Position numbers and translations under genes: made by a program. Below, one piece after another: positions 3,001 through 58,008 of a DNA stretch of 64,000 bases; position 1 is the first letter of the stretch; each line of letters begins with the position of its first letter. The notes beneath the pieces are model-generated. The model saw only the letters and a list, made by a program, of their open reading frames with translations. It did no database searches and was not told the origin of the DNA. The stretch lies in NCBI GenBank assembly GCA_964057225.1, contig OZ059896.1, forward strand, positions 16,926,001-16,990,000, read 5' to 3'. Source of the stretch: Auanema rhodensis (Eukaryota; Animalia; Nematoda).

Positions 3001-6000
3001 CTTAAATTTCAACTTGGTCAACTGGAAAATGAACTTCGCCACGAAGTACATTAAGCAATTTTGAAACCCAAAATTAGCTTCTCTCTTTCACAATCTTTCT
3101 TTTTCTTTTTGCTCTTCTTCTCTCCTTCTCTGATTTTCTCACTCCTCTAAAAAATCTATAAATAGCTGTTTTACACACACACACACACATACATACACTA
3201 ACTATTCACATAAAATAGTGGAAACTGTAACCAAAGCCTCTTCACGAAGCCGAAATTGAGTGAAGTATAGACATCTACATGTATGTATGTAACGCTCACT
3301 TCAGTTCATCTTGGGAACTTTCTATAATTCATTGCTACCCTACGTCGCCACCTACTACACCTACTCTTTAATTATTTTCTTTCAAGCTCATCAGCTTCTC
3401 ACATTCGACATCTTCTCGTACTCTACAATTCTTAGCTTGCTTCCGGAAAAAGGAGATTTTCAGGAAAATCTGGATTAAGTGAAGATAAATAAGTTTAGTT
3501 GCATACTAAGACGATTTTTAACTGATGAAACACGTGTTATATGACGTCAAACGGAAATATTCTCATTTGGAAATTTGTTTTCGGAGTCGTAAAGTACACA
3601 AGCTTGCTGGCTTTCAAATCATATTTTCGTTATTAAACAACGGAAGAGAAAATGAAAGTTTTTAAATGAATGATGTGAAAAAGCATAGTAAATACGGATA
3701 ATAAAGCTAAAGAAGTCTACTCACATCATTATTATCATAATCCAAGTGTTTCCATATTTAGTTTTTTCTTGTTCTATGAAGGTTCTGTTGTTCTTTGTTC
3801 GTAAAAAAAGAGTTAAAAATGAAATTTACTCAAATATGTAAAGTTGTTACATACATGTATGTATGTAAGGAACTTACATTTTAAATAATATTGAAGTTTA
3901 AACTTAAAAAAATAATAATTGTTGTAGAGTATTGAACATAGTTTCAAAAGAAATATGAATGAATATGAAACAAATATAATTTAATCCTTATATATGAATT
4001 TACTTACATATATTCTTCATTTATTAATTTTTTTTAAAGAGATTGATACTAATTAGGAAATAATTTTATAAATTCTATTAGTTTCTTTTTGGAAATATTT
4101 TTCACAATAACTGCAAAAATAATATTAACAAGTGATAAAATAGTTGTAGATTATTAAACATTTGATCATTAAATAAGCTGATGAAAATGAATAAAGAACA
4201 AGTTTTCCTACCAACTTGTATATTTGAACATATAATTATAATTATCTGTATATATATATATATTATATTAATCTTAAGAAATACAAAATTTAAATCAATG
4301 AAGCTTGCTTTGATCTGAAATTTTAAAAATATCCTGACAAACTATGGAGAATATTGAAAAAAATCTGATCAATTTCAAACATTAAACTTTTATTTATTAA
4401 GTAGAAATTTGAAGAAAAAAGAAATTAAGAAAATTCATAATAAAAATGAAAGAACTCTCTAACTAATTATATGTATCTACGTATAAGTTTTCCAAAGAAA
4501 TTGAGAAATATTCTTTTTTTTCTCAGACTGACTTATACCTATTTTCAGATATGAAATATGATAGGTACATGCTGAATTTTGAAATTCAACATCAGTCAAG
4601 TAGTCAAGTAGTTGAAAAGCCTAAAGATTTCAGAAGAATGATCGAGGTGACGTCGTTCTTTTTTTGAAATCACTACGTTTGAATTAGAAAAAAAAGGGTC
4701 TAGTTCCCAACGGGAATCAGAATTCTCACGACTGAAAGAACTCACACAATTTAGCAGAAAATAGGAAAAAAAACGAGAATGACAGAAAGAAAAGAGAGGA
4801 GGAAAGTGAAGTGATATAGAGGGAAAACGAGACTGAGAGAATACAGGAGGGATTTGGTGAATATGAAGAAGAATTGAAGAATGAATGAAACAGATTCAAG
4901 GGGACGAGAGGCAATAGTGTGATTGGAATATCATTGATGTCTGATTCTTTAGTGATTCTACTAGTTTTTTATGTATATGAATGAGAATTTTCAATTCAAA
5001 AAAAATGGTTTTGATGTGTTTCACCTGTGCGCAAAGTTGCAGCAGAAGTGGCAGCAGTAGGAATATCAAAAGCAGCAACACAAATTTTGTGTTACAAATG
5101 ACATAAAAGACCATTTGTATCCTAGAAAATGAAAGTTTCTGTTGTATTTTCTATTTTCAATATTTGCATTGGAATATATATATAATATATAAATCTTCTT
5201 AGTTAATTATCTTATATTAAAATGAGCTAAAACACAAAATATACACTCAAAAACCTTATAAAAACATTTTCTCACATTTATATTTGCTACCGAATGTCAA
5301 TTTTTTCTTATTGTTATTGTAGAAAGAAAAGCAGAGAAATAATGATATAAGATAGACGGACATATGAGTTATGTGTGGGTGTATCATAATTGTTCTCAAA
5401 TAAAAAGTTCAAAAAAAAAAAAACAAAAAAAAAATGTTTTATCTCGTTAATTTCTAGAAACGGAAGAGTTTTCTCTTTCTTTTTTCTCTTTTTTCTTATC
5501 ATATTGCTGCTCTTATCATTAACTTTTTTTGTATTTCATCGTAGAAAGTTTCTTTAATATCAGCTGCTGTTGCTAAAACAAACGAAAACTAAAAAATCAT
5601 TGAAATTTGACAAAAAAGTGAATGTGATTCAAATATATTGAAGGATAATAGATAAGAATAGATGTGATATCTTCGTGGTGTGCCAAGCAATCGTTTGAAG
5701 AATCTTATTGCTACTCGGTAATGGCTCGAAACAGAGCTCTCTGCTGCAACTTCCGGTCTATACGGGTCCACCCCCGCCTTTGCATTCCTATCTCTTTTGC
5801 GTATGCCCTCTCTCGTGACTCATTTCCCAGATTCTCATAGTCTATTTCAATCTGTCTTCTTGTCTAAGCTTTTTCTTTCTCTTCTTTCTCTTCCTTTCAT
5901 ACTCTTTGTTATAGATAGTATATTTATCTATGAAACAGTTTAATTTTAATTTATTCTTCATAAAAATTTTGATTTATAGAAGCATCACTAGTTCAATTTG

Positions 6001-50933: not shown

Positions 50934-53900
50934 TCACTGCTTTCTCTCTTTTTCATCTGGATCCGTTCGGCATATACCTGTCTTGCGCATAGCTGCTACC
51001 ATCTCGTTGCCTGATTCTTTCGGAATCAGTTTGAATAGGGGATGTCGTCGTAACATCTTCTTGAACTCAGATTCATCTCCCACAATTCCAATTATAGTTA
51101 AACGTGCTGAAAGTATTACACATAAGTTGTTATTTTCTTCGAGATAGTTTTCTTTATGAGACTTCTCTCGTTTTTGATCTTTGATTAAGTTAAGTGAGAA
51201 CACAAAGGGCAATAACCGGGCTGGCAAGGGAAGCCTATCGAGGGACGGTGAAGATGTGAAGAGAAGAGAGAATTAGAGGGACAGAGAGTGAGAGAGGGAA
51301 ATAGAGAGAGGGAGGGAGGATAGAGAGGGAAGAAGGACGAGAGAGAGAGAGAAAGAGAGAGAAATAGAGAGTGAGAGAGAGAGAGAGAAAGAGAGAGAAA
51401 AAAGTACCTAAGAGAAAGAAAGATAAGGTTTTGGAAAGATGTAGGAACATAGCCAAGACTATTTCAGCGACTTAAGTTAAACTTCACAGTCTGCTCTCCG
51501 TATTAACACTTCTGGCCATGACAATGACCCCAAAGAGATAAGCTATTGTTGTTACGTCATTTGAAATGATTTGATTTTTTTTGTTATAAGCAAGTTCAGA
51601 TTGGGTTCGAAAACAGATCACGCCCATTAAAGGTATGAAATGTTCAATGATTTCACATATAAGGAGAAAAAAATTTTGTGACTGATGGCCGAATGGTGGT
51701 TTATTATATGTAGCAGAATGAATTGCATATTATTTGATTTTGTGGATCATTTTAATTCGTACGAAAAACATCTCGCATTGACATACTCATGTCACAGCCA
51801 ATTTCTCAGCTAGACAGGTCATGAAAAATAGCAAATTGAATTACTGTTTCAAATAAAACGCTTTCTAATATAATTCAAATAAGGTTGGCTGACCTTGCAA
51901 TTCAATTTAACAGCCTATATTCTTGGAATACGTCATTCACCGAACTACAAGGGATGGTCGAAGTTCGACCTCGAGAAGCTATTCCAAACTTTTCAGATCA
52001 CAGGTATAAATTTTAGGGTCACATCAACACAAATTTTAAAAATACGTAATCAAGGATCGGGTTGATACGAATCAAATTAGTAAAAGAGAAAATGATAAAT
52101 CATACTTATATCGTCAATTGGTATTCCTAGCTCTGAATAATTTTTTTCTGATAAATCTATGTCATAAGCACAACCAACAATCATCTTGTTATTGATTTCA
52201 ATATCATCTAACAGCCTTAAACAGTTAATATGTGTATAAGTTCTTAAAACTTTGATTTTCTTTTTTTTTGTTGCCATCCTTTCCCAAGAAGGAAGTTACA
52301 AGTTGATTACGTAAGGAACCTACTTCTGCCTGCATTCTTCATAGTTCAAATTGCTAAAATCGGCTGCTTTTCCCATATATGATAGAGTTGTCTATAAGAA
52401 CAAAAAAATCTCAAATTAACTTCCTCGGTTTTCAGTTGTTCATTCAGAAACAAAAAAAACGGAACGAAGGTCTATACAACTTTCCAAATACTTACGGAAC
52501 ATCCATAGATAGCGGGAAGTGGAAACAGAGTGTAATGTCTGCTGTTCCGTATTCCATGTACCTTCAGATCATCATCTTCTTTCTTGCTCTAGATATACAG
52601 GTGATATAAGGAAAATGCAAGTTCGTGCAAACATACAAGCTCCAGGAGATCTGTAGTTACTTTGGAATGGGTGTTACCCTTTTCAGGAGTATAATCATGA
52701 ACTGATGTGGCTTGATTGAAAAACGGCCGCAAGCCTGACTTTTCCAAGTCATCTTCAAAAAAAATGCTTATATAATTAAAAAAAACTTTAATACTAAAAC
52801 ATATATTAAATAAAATGAAATATAAATTCTTACTTTTCAGTCCTTCATAAAAATATGTTAATGGATAAATAGTTACATCATCACTTTGCTCAATGATAGG
52901 CTCCGACATGCATCGTATTGAAACTTTTAAACCATGACAATCTCGTGTACGAAATTGTTGACAAATTGTCAAAATTGTGCACGACTCACAATCTCGGATA
53001 AAAACGCTGCAACGAATTAGTATAAAGCCTATTTTCTTTTTCATCCGGTTTGTCTATGTTCTTTATTTATTATTTTTGAAACATGCTCAACTCTGTTGCT
53101 TCTTGAAACTGATTGCAGTGAAAATAAACAACAGCTTCTGGTTTAGCTATTGATATCAGTTTGTGAACACAATGAACGACATGTGAGAATCTTACAAGTT
53201 ACGTTAATGAATTTTTGCGCTGAATGTTCTATTTGCTGACAGGAATTTTCGTCTTATAACAATCATCAAGATGACGAAAGTTTAATGGCTAACCTTATTA
53301 TTTTATTTAATTCTTCCTCTCTCTCTCTCTCTCTCCCAGAAACTAGTATACGTTACAAGAAAAAAGTAGTATTATAAGAAATGAGGGAACCACAAAATTC
53401 TAAGAAAACAGTTTTCTTTCACACACGGTATACATAAATTTGTTTTGATATTGTCGAAATAATCCAAAAAGAAAAGAAAACGCGTAAATGTTTATAAATA
53501 TAAGAATGATGAGGATATTATAATGATGATAATGTTCTATTAAATTTAACTAATATACTCATTAAATTATTCTCATTAAAAATATGTTACTTATCTAAAT
53601 CATAATCATTTATGTAATATATTTTATTTCTATTTTTTCATTTGAATGAGAATTTTACTTTTTTTTCATGTAGAGGTTTGAAATTGCACAAAAGGGCATA
53701 TTTTAATTGTATGATATATCATAATGATTGAAGCAATTATTATGAATTTTTAAAATAGAATATTTCGGACTTACCTCCCGGTACAAGGACCAAGAATAAT
53801 TAAACAATCTCGACAATCATCTATATTAATGGAAGCTGTGTGGCCCAGTATAATAATTGTACTTTCCTAAAACAGAAAAAAAATATTTTGGGTAAAAGTT

Positions 53901-54309: not shown

Positions 54310-55233
54310 ACTGATGAAAAGTTATGTCTTGAGCCTCGACTAACAGCCTTATTGCAGGTGTAGCAATGGCTTAATCGTCTGCTCAAGGCTTTTCTCGAAT
54401 GAAACTGTTGCCATGGAAACATTGCCGTCGTCCCTCCCTCCACATGGCTACGTGAATTCTCTTCACAGCAGGATAAATAATCCTAATACGAAGAATATTT
54501 CTGGTTATTGATAACTTTCAGTATCTTCGCGAAATGCGAATTAGGAACAAAAGATGAAAAGCTGAAAAAAATGTTCATGAGGTGATGATTATAAGATGTA
54601 TAGAAACAAAAAACAACAACGTATATATATATATATATATGCAAATATATAAAATATATGCTATATAAATATATATTTTTTACCAGATATAGGATTATTT
54701 GAACTGCCAATTTCTAATTCAACTTTAAAATGTCAAAAAAAAAGCAAATAAACATCAGAAAACTACGATGCTACAAGTATTTTCAGGAAAAACAGCGGAC
54801 ACTGCCAAATCACACCCATTCGTGCGTCAGACCGAAAAATCCGTGTTATATCTAGATTTGTTTGAATTTTTCATAACTTTGCCAGACAAAGTTTCCTGTC
54901 TCTTAAAGATGTCTATTGTTAGCGGCTTTCTATGAAAACAACTAGAACTCCAAACGAACTTTTTCCAAAATACAAACTGCATCCAAATTCCACAAACAAC
55001 GGAGTAAAGTTTGTGCATTCACCAGAAATATTCATAAATAAAAAACGAAATTGAAAAAACAATCTCTTTATATTATTCCCACTTCAACAACCAATTAACA
55101 TCAACAAAAATCGCTAGTATCCCTTTCATCAGTTAGCATTCCATTCCAATTTTTTAAAAAAAAATATTATACAAGATATAAAAAACGATTTTGAAATTTA
55201 GGTTATATACAAGTGAGAGAAAATACTAGAGAT

Positions 55234-55886
55234 CTATTCAGTCTTTGGACAGTCACGGGAGATATGTCCAGTTTCCTGGCAATTGTAACAGCGCTTGGCA
55301 TCAACAGATCCAGTCTCGCTGCACTCACGGGAGATATGTCCAGACTTTCCGCAATTGTAACAACGTCTACCATTTCCTCCACCTGCTCCTCTGTCTCCTA
55401 AACAGTACACAGTTAAAATCAAATATTATCAAAAAAGCTAACCGTAGTTGCCACCGCGTCCACCACCAGATGGGCATTCTCTGGCAAAATGTCCAGTTCC
55501 CTTGCATTGATAGCACTCAACATCAGAGTTTCCTCCTCTACGATAAGATTGACGTCCTCCTTGATCTTGAGGGCATTCACGGGAGAAATGTCCAGTCTCA
55601 CCACAGGAGTAGCAGGCTGTAAAATAATTTATAGATTGTCATCCCAGAATAATCTCCCCTAATCGCGCACTTCGTCACCTCCGGCACCAACAAAACACAT
55701 TATACAAATAAAATCTAATTTTTTGGAGGAAGCGAGAAGAATTACCTAAGAAGCGCTCAACAACCCAAAACACCACCAACATCGTCCTCCTCCTCCTCCT
55801 CCTCCTCTGCGTTCGTCCTGATAGTTGGGACAGTTACGGGAAATGTGTCCAACGGTTTGGCATTTGTAGCATTCAACGTCAGACAT
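55234..55886 (-). CDS. CNBP/GIS2-like protein with five CCHC zinc knuckles and RGG linkers
   Basis: Exons 55886-55781, 55616-~55443, ~55398-55234 encode CYKCQTVGHISRNC, CYSCGETGHFSREC, CYQCKGTGHFAREC, CYNCGKSGHISREC and CYNCQETGHISRDC. TTTTCAG acceptor (trans-splice-like) 7 nt upstream of the ATG. Confidence 0.92.
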
Positions 55887-56262
55887 GGTTAACCTGAAAA
55901 TAATTGCGATAGACAAATTACGAACAATAATATTATAATTTTAGTTAAAAATACAAGATATACTATACAGAATTAATTCTTATAATTATTATATACCCAA
56001 AAATATAGTTGAGACCTCGTGAGTTTGTCTCTGATGTGCATGTTATTACGGTATGTCACCGCATTTTCAAAATAGTCATCGTTTAGCATTGGAGCGAGTT
56101 AAATTGTCGTTAGAGCATTACACTAAACCTTTATTGTTAAATGCAACCAATAAACCATTGTGGCACTGATAATATTGTTTTATTTTTTCTTCATTATCAT
56201 TCTTATAAATATGTGTATTTAATATTTTTTTATATAAATAAATGTTTATTGCTCATTAAGCT

Positions 56263-57296
56263 ATGGATACTATGCATGATGAGAAAAGAGAGGCTATTCC
56301 AGCCCTTGGATATTATCCACATGAACCAATTAGTACTGGTGTAAGTAATTACTAAAGAAATTTTATTCGAATTTAAAATCAGCATCTTATTGTTTTAGAC
56401 AACTCTTATTGCTATGGAATATGACGGTGGAGTAGTTGTTGGAACTGATTCCAGAACTAGTGCTGGGTTAGTTAATGTCACTGTTTTACATATTCAATTT
56501 GGTATTTTAAGTTCATTCATTTCTTCCCGTGCTACCAACAAAATTACCCCAATTACTGATAATTTGGTTGTTTGTCGATCTGGATCTGCTGCTGATACTC
56601 AAGCAATTGCTGATATTGCCAAGTACTATTTGGAAGTATTCAGGTACCTTTTACAGTATTTAATAATTATAAATATTTCCTCTAGTCTGAAAGAACGTTC
56701 ACCTATTTCTGTTTATCGTTCAACTCAAATCTTTCGTTGGTTCTTGCACAAATACAGGTAAATTTATCTTGTTAAATAATTTTTATAAAGATGAATTTAA
56801 GAGATCAACTTTCCGCTTCCGTTCTTGTCGCTGGTTGGGATGAACAAGAGGGAGGACAGGTAAGTATATGTGTTATCATTTTATTTCAACTCCTTTCTTA
56901 GCTTTATGCTATTCCTCTTGGTGGATTTGTCTCCAGACAGCGTTGCACTGCCTCTGGATCTGGATCTACCTTTGTTCAGGTTTGTAGTGTTTTTTGTTCA
57001 GTTTTGATTTGATTTGCTTAGGGATTCTTGGATAATGCATGGAAGCCTAACATGACCAAAGAAGAATGTAAAGCTATTGTAAAACAAGCTGTTGGTCTCG
57101 CTGTATTCAGAGATGGGTTAGTATTCACTTCATATTCTTATTTGTTTTTGCTTCTCTTAGATCATCTGGTGGAGTTGTCAGAATAGCCACAATTGATAAG
57201 GAAGGTACTAACCTCGAATTATACCGTCCAGATAAGCCAGGATTCCCAAGTGTTCTTCCTCCTCCATCTCATGTGACCTTTGCTACTCAGAATTAA
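56263..57296 (+). CDS. pbs-1: 20S proteasome beta-1 subunit (PSMB6 ortholog)
   Basis: Propeptide ...PISTG then TTLIAMEYDGGVVVGTDSRTSAG, CRSGSAADTQAIAD, ASGSGSTF, RDGSSGGVVR; short introns; TAA at 57294-57296. Confidence 0.96.
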
Positions 57297-58008
57297 CAAT
57301 TTGAATAAGGTGCAAAGTGTAAATTAATGGGTTATGTGAACTCTTATCGAACCAACTTTTCTCATCTAATTATTTATTGTATACAGATAAAATAAAGGTT
57401 GTCTTTACTCCGAACCCCTGTGTACTTGTGAAAGGGAAATAACCTAAAAGTATTTCAACGAGTTTGTCTCTTTCCAGAAGTCAACTTTCGATTTTATTTT
57501 ACCTTTCATGAGGTTGATGACAGGCATAAGGCAATTATAATATACGGCCTAGTTGTATGCGGTCATTGCAAACCAAATTGACTATTCCAGAAACTGACCA
57601 GTATCACGACCGGATTTTTCATTCAAAATTAGCTTTCTAAATTTTGTGACACATGGTCATGATTGGCAATCTCTTTTAGATTATGATGACCTGAAATTTT
57701 AGAATTCAAGATAGTGGCATTAAAAAGTATTGTATGTTTATTACTAATATTATCGGATATTTCATAACAATATACAATATATATTCATATACAATAGTGA
57801 TATAATAAAGCTATTACTTTAAAAATATGAAAGAGTTACGGTATTCGGGAACATTTTTAAAATATTAGCTTTTTTGTAACATGAGAATATTTTTTGGTTC
57901 GAAATCCTTTGGATTTTCTCCAAATAATTGCAAGTATGGATCTTAAAGCGTTAAAGAGATTACGTTTGTATACATTAACATTGGATTTTACACTAATTCC
58001 ACTACAAC

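What the first reader, a model, noticed from the sequence alone, without database searches (positions are those of the whole stretch)
55617..55780. CNBP intron 1 holds a stop-codon poison donor buried in a G-rich hairpin: candidate autoregulatory splicing switch
Seen (- strand): the productive donor is weak (CGAT|GTTGGT, 55780). 35 nt downstream is a stronger donor, CTTAG|GTAAT (55745); using it extends the frame (CWWCFGLLSAS) to an in-frame TAG right at the junction. That donor lies in the 5' arm of a predicted long stem: UCUUAGGUAAUUCUUCU-CGCUUC-CUCC (55751-55725) pairs with GGAG-GAAGUG-AGGGGAGAUUAUUCUGGGA (55682-55642). The intron is 164 nt and GC-rich, whereas neighbouring introns are ~45 nt and AT-rich, and GUUGGUG and GUGUUUUG motifs each occur twice. 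Known: CNBP/GIS2 knuckles bind G-rich (GGAG-type) single-stranded RNA and act as chaperones, and nematode RNA-binding and ribosomal protein genes autoregulate by unproductive splicing plus NMD. Inference: excess protein binds the G-rich arm, frees the poison donor and sends its own mRNA to NMD.
Basis: partly seen in the sequence, partly recalled or inferred. Interest (0 to 1): 0.78.

Follow-up and report, generated by a model that had tools for sequence, protein, structure and literature searches.

The report
Conserved poison splice donor in CNBP
The first intron of a nematode CNBP (zinc-knuckle RNA-binding protein) gene holds a second, stronger splice donor 35 bases in that is used in real transcripts, adds a premature stop and is conserved in hookworm and Caenorhabditis, so it is very likely a dosage-control device; the RNA hairpin proposed to gate it is not supported.

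Summary
Spliced contigs from four public runs confirm the productive joint 55616|55781. One run (X1) also holds the predicted poison joint 55616|55746, at about 5% of local depth.

Orthologous loci in Caenorhabditis bovis and Ancylostoma duodenale share the layout: a weak proximal donor, a 35-39 nt G/U-rich extension with an in-frame stop, then a strong TTAG|GTAA donor. The extension is as conserved as the exon-1 coding sequence, while the rest of the intron is not.

The C. elegans orthologue K08D12.3 is already listed as an endogenous NMD target with an identifiable NMD isoform (PMC12129023). Unproductive splicing of nematode CNBP is therefore real, conserved and partly known.

The hairpin is the weak part:
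- It folds no better than shuffled sequence (z 0.09 and -0.27).
- It is absent in C. bovis.
- Its 3' arm is not conserved.

Autoregulation by CNBP is inferred, not shown. I think it more likely acts on the conserved GGA/GGU tract around the proximal donor. No snoRNA or other Rfam family lies in the intron.

The scan has two unchecked notes of similar candidate splicing/NMD switches elsewhere in this genome.

The parts
55781..55886 (-). Exon 1 coding part (ATG 55886-55884; first CCHC knuckle and Gly-rich linker)
   Evidence: Translation; Pfam zf-CCHC; RNA contig X3 record 7 reaches 55894
55785..55807 (-). GGA-repeat tract at the end of exon 1, next to the productive donor; candidate G-rich protein-binding site
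   Evidence: Sequence; GGAGGAGG is also present at the exon-1 end in C. bovis and A. duodenale
55775..55780 (-). Productive (proximal) donor GTTGGT, weak: -1 U and +4 G
   Evidence: Joint 55616|55781 in contigs of X2 and X3 and in the X1 loose end; compared with 8 confirmed donors
55746..55780 (-). 35-nt poison extension, 86% G+U, ending in the in-frame TAG (55748-55746)
   Evidence: homologous 39-nt and 35-nt extensions with in-frame TGA in L002 and L001
55740..55745 (-). Distal (poison) donor GTAATT, preceded by TTAG
   Evidence: Joint 55616|55746, skipping 129 nt, GT..AG, in X1; GTAATTC is identical in A. duodenale and GTAAATA in C. bovis
55725..55751 (-).
   Evidence: Paired in the MFE fold; duplex -21.7 kcal/mol, p about 0.013; not conserved
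55642..55682 (-).
   Evidence: no homologous sequence in L001 or L002
55617..55624 (-). Acceptor TTTTACAG shared by both donors
55443..55616 (-). Exon 2 (knuckles 2 and 3)
55398..55442 (-). Intron 2, 45 nt, 24% GC
   Evidence: Joint in all four runs
55234..55397 (-). Exon 3 coding part (knuckles 4 and 5, stop TAG 55236-55234); the 3' UTR runs to about 55051-55071

Best explanation
Intron 1 of this nematode CNBP orthologue carries a conserved unproductive-splicing device.

Shown:
- The weak proximal donor at 55780 gives the full five-knuckle protein.
- The strong distal donor at 55745 adds a 35-nt G/U-rich extension whose in-frame TAG truncates the protein after knuckle 1.
- Both joints occur in RNA.
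- The extension, its stop and the distal donor are conserved across clade V nematodes.

From the literature: the C. elegans orthologue is an NMD target.

Inferred:
- The distal-donor mRNA is degraded by NMD here too.
- The ratio of the two donors sets CNBP dosage.
- The most likely regulator is CNBP itself. It would bind the conserved single-stranded G-rich tract (GGA repeats plus GGUGGUG) that flanks the proximal donor, hinder U1 there and shift splicing to the distal donor, giving negative feedback.
- The long hairpin is not needed for this model.
For: -: productive joint 55616|55781 in several runs. Poison joint 55616|55746 in X1 at 59 against about 1150 depth (about 5%), plus an unspliced contig at about 3%.
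- the in-frame TAG gives a 46-aa product.
- C. bovis and A. duodenale have a weak GAG|GTG.. donor, a 35- or 39-nt G/U-rich extension with in-frame TGA, then TTTAG|GTAA. Extension identity is 65-68%, equal to the exon-1 CDS (64-69%). The only co-linear intronic BLAST hits lie in the extension.
- the gene order proteasome-beta / CNBP / XRP2 is shared, so these are orthologues.
- (PMC12129023): K08D12.3 is among 17 genes with an unambiguous NMD-eliciting isoform.
- (PMC10500230): CNBP prefers G-rich single strands, with the first described motif GTG(G/C)GGTG. This resembles the conserved GGTGGTG and GGGGTG of the extension.
Against: - The poison joint was seen in only one of four runs, as one contig with 21 nt laid on the upstream side (the rest is in a masked repeat).
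- No NMD-deficient data exist for this species.
- Nothing here shows CNBP binding or any change in isoform ratio with CNBP level.
- The element was not found in clade III or IV orthologues.
- I could not see the C. elegans isoform structure itself, so that it uses the same donor pair is an assumption.
Confidence: 0.5

Rival explanations
1. Same conserved AS-NMD device, but the donor choice is set by other trans-factors (a G-run or GU-rich binder of hnRNP F/H or CELF/UNC-75 type, SR proteins on the GGA-repeat exon end, or general U1 availability), not by CNBP.
For: - The conserved element is G/U-rich, with G-runs and UGUUG-like words that fit several RNA-binding proteins.
- No datum here ties CNBP protein to the site.
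Against: - RNA-binding proteins that are NMD targets commonly autoregulate (established knowledge; rpl-12, AtGRP7/8 in PMC2602770).
- The element matches CNBP's known G-rich preference.
Confidence: 0.22
2. One reading: a long hairpin (55751-55725 with 55682-55642) hides the distal donor. Excess CNBP binds the G-rich 3' arm, opens the stem and exposes the poison donor.
For: - The stem is in the MFE fold.
- The arm-versus-rest duplex is -21.7 kcal/mol against -14.8 +/- 2.8 in shuffles, p about 0.013.
- The 3' arm is oddly GC-rich (54%) for this genome.
- A weaker complement exists in A. duodenale, p about 0.05.
Against: - Whole-intron z = 0.09 and stem-region z = -0.27.
- C. bovis has no such duplex (p 0.62; z +0.74).
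- The 3' arm has no homologue in other species.
- RNAalifold gives -4.8 kcal/mol.
- The arm was chosen after looking.
Confidence: 0.12
3. Splicing noise: a cryptic consensus donor near a weak real donor is occasionally used and cleared by NMD, with no regulatory role.
For: Low share (about 5%) in one run only.
Against: - The distal donor, its spacing (35/39/35 nt), an in-frame stop and the intervening sequence are kept in three lineages.
- The rest of the intron has diverged completely.
Confidence: 0.1
4. The long, GC-richer intron hosts a small RNA (H/ACA or C/D snoRNA, or a mirtron-like hairpin).
For: - The intron is 3-4 times longer and GC-richer than its neighbours.
- An ACA lies 21 nt upstream of the acceptor.
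Against: - No Rfam match in the intron even at E up to 10.
- No conservation of the intron body.
- The only intron-covering contig runs into exon 2, so it is pre-mRNA.
- No excess folding energy.
Confidence: 0.03

Closest known systems
C. elegans K08D12.3 (CNBP/ZNF9 orthologue) as an endogenous NMD target
   Same: Orthologous gene by protein similarity and by the shared gene order proteasome-beta / CNBP / XRP2. That K08D12.1 is pbs-1 and K08D12.2 is rpi-2 is from my memory. It is listed with an unambiguous NMD-eliciting isoform (PMC12129023).
   Different: The papers I could read give no isoform structure, cis-element or regulator. I found no described conservation of a poison donor or an autoregulatory model. 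This window is a different, unnamed clade V species.
C. elegans ribosomal protein genes rpl-12, rpl-3, rpl-7A, rpl-10A (unproductive splicing plus NMD)
   Same: Alternative splicing gives PTC isoforms that smg genes remove; conserved intronic sequence; feedback by the encoded protein for rpl-12 and rpl-10A (from memory: Mitrovich and Anderson 2000; Takei et al. 2016). They sit in the same 17-gene list as K08D12.3.
   Different: Unrelated proteins and cis-elements. Feedback is not shown for CNBP.
Arabidopsis AtGRP7/AtGRP8 autoregulation
   Same: An RNA-binding protein with a Gly-rich region promotes a cryptic intronic 5' splice site. The mRNA then keeps the first part of the intron with a PTC and goes to NMD (PMC2602770). 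The layout is nearly identical.
   Different: RRM proteins in plants, where binding to their own pre-mRNA has been shown; here it has not.
Structure-gated 5' splice sites (tau exon 10 stem-loop, SMN2 TSL2)
   Different: In those cases the stem is conserved and validated by mutation. Here it is neither conserved nor above chance.

Membership tests
CNBP/ZNF9/GIS2 zinc-knuckle proteins | Small protein made almost only of tandem CX2CX4HX4C knuckles with Gly/Arg-rich linkers | tested here: met
   147 aa with five knuckles; PF00098 in all three exon pieces; 65% identity to C. bovis CNBP, 50% to Ascaris HEXBP
CNBP/ZNF9/GIS2 zinc-knuckle proteins | Orthology to C. elegans K08D12.3 by synteny | tested here: met
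   Divergent proteasome-beta gene and downstream XRP2/TBCC gene in the window and in C. bovis. The C. elegans gene order itself is from memory.
Unproductive splicing coupled to NMD (AS-NMD) | An alternative splice event that occurs in RNA and introduces a premature stop | tested here: met
   Joint 55616|55746 in X1; in-frame TAG
Unproductive splicing coupled to NMD (AS-NMD) | The PTC isoform is stabilised when NMD is inactivated | not testable with these tools
   No NMD-mutant data for this species. The C. elegans orthologue is reported as an NMD target.
Unproductive splicing coupled to NMD (AS-NMD) | Conservation of the poison site beyond neutral intron sequence | tested here: met
   three clade V lineages. 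Not found in clade III/IV.
Autoregulated RNA-binding-protein genes | [quoted passage not shown] | not testable with these tools
   Only indirect: the G-rich element fits the CNBP preference
Structure-gated splice donor | A stem around the donor that is more stable than chance | tested here: inconclusive
   z 0.09 and -0.27, against a targeted duplex p about 0.013
Structure-gated splice donor | The stem is conserved or covarying in orthologues | tested here: not met
   C. bovis none; A. duodenale has a different distant partner; RNAalifold -4.8 kcal/mol
Intron-hosted snoRNA | Match to a snoRNA model, or box motifs with a conserved fold | tested here: not met
   No Rfam hit in the intron at E up to 10; intron body not conserved

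The most novel reading that the evidence does not exclude
CNBP, known as a G-rich single-strand binder and G-quadruplex unfolder acting on translation and transcription, also acts in the nucleus as a splicing regulator of its own pre-mRNA. It would read a conserved GGA/GGU tract that straddles a weak donor and divert splicing to a poison donor. In this species an added hairpin would tune access to that donor.
Probability: 0.3. Interest if true: 0.6.

Novelty: new member of a known kind. Interest (0 to 1): 0.45.

Why it matters
CNBP dosage matters: haploinsufficiency and the CCTG expansion in human CNBP intron 1 are linked to myotonic dystrophy type 2, and how cells set CNBP levels is poorly understood. 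A conserved poison donor with a defined 35-39 nt cis-element gives a compact, testable handle on CNBP homeostasis in C. elegans. It also explains why K08D12.3 keeps appearing in NMD-target lists. If CNBP itself reads the element, that would be a first splicing role for this protein.

Tried and rejected
- Rfam scan of 54500-57000 at E up to 10: nothing in the intron. The only hit is a chance SNORA48-like match in the 3' UTR at E 8.
- Exact inverted-repeat search: none.
- Word search with exon 2 alone: only distant short hits, because of the length filter.
- Large HMMER search with exon 3: dominated by multi-knuckle proteins, but it yielded the C. bovis model.
- Profile search including window exons: no closer clade V relatives, and the window's own protein is not in the collection.
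- Metagenome scan with the conserved 23-nt element: one chance hit in a GC-rich bacterial gene, L005.
- C. tropicalis P0123 has no contig on record.
- Clade III/IV loci (Dirofilaria, Onchocerca, Enterobius, Steinernema) lack the element or have the intron elsewhere.
- RNAalifold on three species: no consensus structure.
- Repeated-motif enrichment: not significant.
- I did not type the spliced 147-aa protein into any search tool, so exact look-up of the window's own gene and species was not done.

Full report
**Observation.** On the minus strand the window encodes a 147-aa protein with five CCHC knuckles. Its parts are exon 1 (55886-55781), intron 1 (55780-55617, 164 nt), exon 2 (55616-55443), intron 2 (55442-55398, 45 nt) and exon 3 to the TAG at 55236-55234 (Pfam zf-CCHC in every exon piece).

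The productive donor is GAT|GTTGGT. Thirty-five nt downstream lies TAG|GTAATT, whose TAG is in frame, so the distal-donor product ends after 46 residues. Eight neighbouring introns confirmed by RNA are 42-58 nt and 14-29% GC, against 164 nt and 39% GC for intron 1. Their donors have G at -1 in seven of eight cases and never G at +4, so the productive donor is atypical and the distal one is closer to consensus.

**RNA evidence.** Four coded public runs from one study hold spliced contigs of this locus, so they are RNA. A loose end reading CCAAGTTTG on the neighbouring proteasome gene is the end of a nematode spliced leader.

- The productive joint 55616|55781 is present. X3 record 7 bridges it with the 36 masked repeat letters accounted for; X2 record 5 runs through the joint; and X1 has a loose end at 55616 that continues with the reverse complement of the end of exon 1.
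- Run X1 also has a joint 55616|55746 that skips 129 nt with GT..AG ends on the gene strand. Its depth is 59, against about 1150 for the exon-2 contig that ends at the branch point, or about 5%.
- X1 also has an unspliced contig, 55589-55766, at depth 36 (about 3%).
- Only 21 nt were laid upstream of the poison joint, because the GGA repeat (55767-55816) is masked by the tool.
- The other three runs show no variant. Contigs drop rare forms, so this is not evidence of absence.

**Orthologues.** The exon-3 HMMER search led to a Caenorhabditis bovis model, CAB3409395.1, which is a CNBP-XRP2 fusion call and 65% identical over the CNBP part. Its locus L001 has a divergent proteasome gene upstream and XRP2 downstream. 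The window has the same order, with an XRP2-like gene at 52517-53866.

- In L001, exon 1 ends GGAGGAG|GTGGAG. An in-frame TGA follows at 3121-3123, and a strong TTTTAG|GTAAAT donor lies 35 nt in. The intron is 173 nt.
- In Ancylostoma duodenale (L002), the annotated model misses the true exon 1 (ATG at 1440). There exon 1 ends GGAGGAG|GTGCTA, the 39-nt extension has an in-frame TGA, and it ends TTTAG|GTAATTC. The intron is about 1.1 kb. The productive joint in this species is inferred from frame and homology, not from RNA.
- Extension identity to the window is 65-68%, the same as the exon-1 coding sequence (64-69%).
- The seven bases of the distal donor are identical to A. duodenale.
- The only co-linear intronic BLAST hits fall in the extension; the rest of the intron shows nothing.
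- Dirofilaria, Onchocerca, Enterobius and Steinernema lack the element or have the intron at another place.

The device is therefore conserved at least across Rhabditina.

**Literature.** K08D12.3, the C. elegans CNBP/ZNF9 homologue (PMC3091301), is one of 17 genes for which an NMD-eliciting isoform could be unambiguously identified. It was found de novo and in two or more earlier data sets (PMC12129023). I found no description of the isoform's structure, of a cis-element or of feedback. CNBP binds G-rich single strands; the first motif described was GTG(G/C)GGTG, and it prevents or unfolds G-quadruplexes (PMC10500230).

| Test | Result |
|---|---|
| Whole intron against 200 dinucleotide shuffles | -34.3 kcal/mol; shuffles -34.6 +/- 3.6, z 0.09 |
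| Stem region alone | z -0.27 |
| Duplex of the 27-nt donor arm with the rest of the intron, window | -21.7 kcal/mol; shuffles -14.8 +/- 2.8, p about 0.013 (arm chosen post hoc) |
| Same test, C. bovis | -7.5 kcal/mol, p 0.62 |
| Same test, A. duodenale | p about 0.05, with an unrelated partner about 400 nt downstream |
| C. bovis whole intron | z +0.74 |
| RNAalifold, three species | -4.8 kcal/mol |

The GC-rich 3' arm (54% GC) has no homologue in the other species and remains unexplained. The repeated GTTGGTG and GTGTTTTG words are within chance (p 0.22).

**Mechanism.**

- Shown: there are two competing donors, both are used, the distal one brings a PTC, and the element is conserved.
- From the literature: the orthologue is degraded by NMD.
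- Inferred: the distal-donor mRNA, with a stop at codon 47, a downstream intron and about 500 nt of effective 3' UTR, is an NMD substrate here too. A 5% steady-state share may therefore hide a much larger share of splicing events.
- Inferred: because what is conserved is the G-rich tract around the proximal donor (GGA repeats in the exon, GGUGGUG and G-runs in the extension), the simplest feedback model is that CNBP binds there, hinders U1 at the weak donor and hands the intron to the strong distal donor. Other G/U-binding factors could do the same.

**Comparison and novelty.** The layout matches AtGRP7/8 in plants (PMC2602770) and the C. elegans rpl genes that share the NMD-target list. As a phenomenon, nematode CNBP being an NMD target is already on record. 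The conserved donor pair, its G/U-rich element and a CNBP feedback model were not in any paper I could find.

I rate this as a new member of a known kind, of moderate interest. The hairpin part of the finding should be dropped unless closer relatives show covariation.

**Limits.**
- One study, contigs only.
- No NMD-deficient data.
- Three species for conservation.
- The species of the window was not identified.

Noticed in passing
window 56259-57400 (+): A proteasome beta subunit gene (pbs-1-like) is divergent from CNBP. It has seven RNA-confirmed introns of 42-58 nt and a spliced-leader end (CCAAGTTTG) joined at 56259. Only about 365 bp separate the two genes' 5' ends, so a shared bidirectional promoter is likely.
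   Followed up: partly
window 55894-55900 (-): TTTTCAG lies just upstream of the CNBP ATG, and the mRNA contig ends at 55894. This suggests the CNBP mRNA is trans-spliced there too.
   Followed up: no
window 52517-53866 (-): An XRP2/TBCC-like gene lies downstream of CNBP. The order proteasome / CNBP / XRP2 is the same as in C. bovis.
   Followed up: partly
L002 1440-2968 (Ancylostoma duodenale KN736966.1): The public gene model (P0157) misses the true first exon with knuckle 1 and instead takes intronic pieces as exons. One of these (1937-2011) contains the 12-nt complement of the distal-donor region.
   Followed up: partly
L001 3001-5256 (Caenorhabditis bovis CADEPM010000008.1): The public model CAB3409395.1 fuses CNBP with the downstream XRP2 gene. 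The real CNBP stop is at about 3585.
   Followed up: no
L004 2286-2450 (Dirofilaria immitis): The filarial CNBP has a good proximal donor (GAG|GTTAGT), with TAG as the next in-frame codon, and a consensus AAG|GTAGGT 59 nt downstream. Whether this is an independent poison donor is unknown. It is not clearly shared with Onchocerca.
   Followed up: partly
window 55642-55690 (-): A stretch of 54-60% GC inside an otherwise AT-rich intron, holding GGAGG and GGGGAG words.
   Followed up: partly
window 55009-55060 (-): A weak SNORA48-like Rfam match (14.9 bits, E 8.1) just beyond the contig-mapped 3' end of the CNBP mRNA (about 55051-55071). I take it as chance.
   Followed up: no
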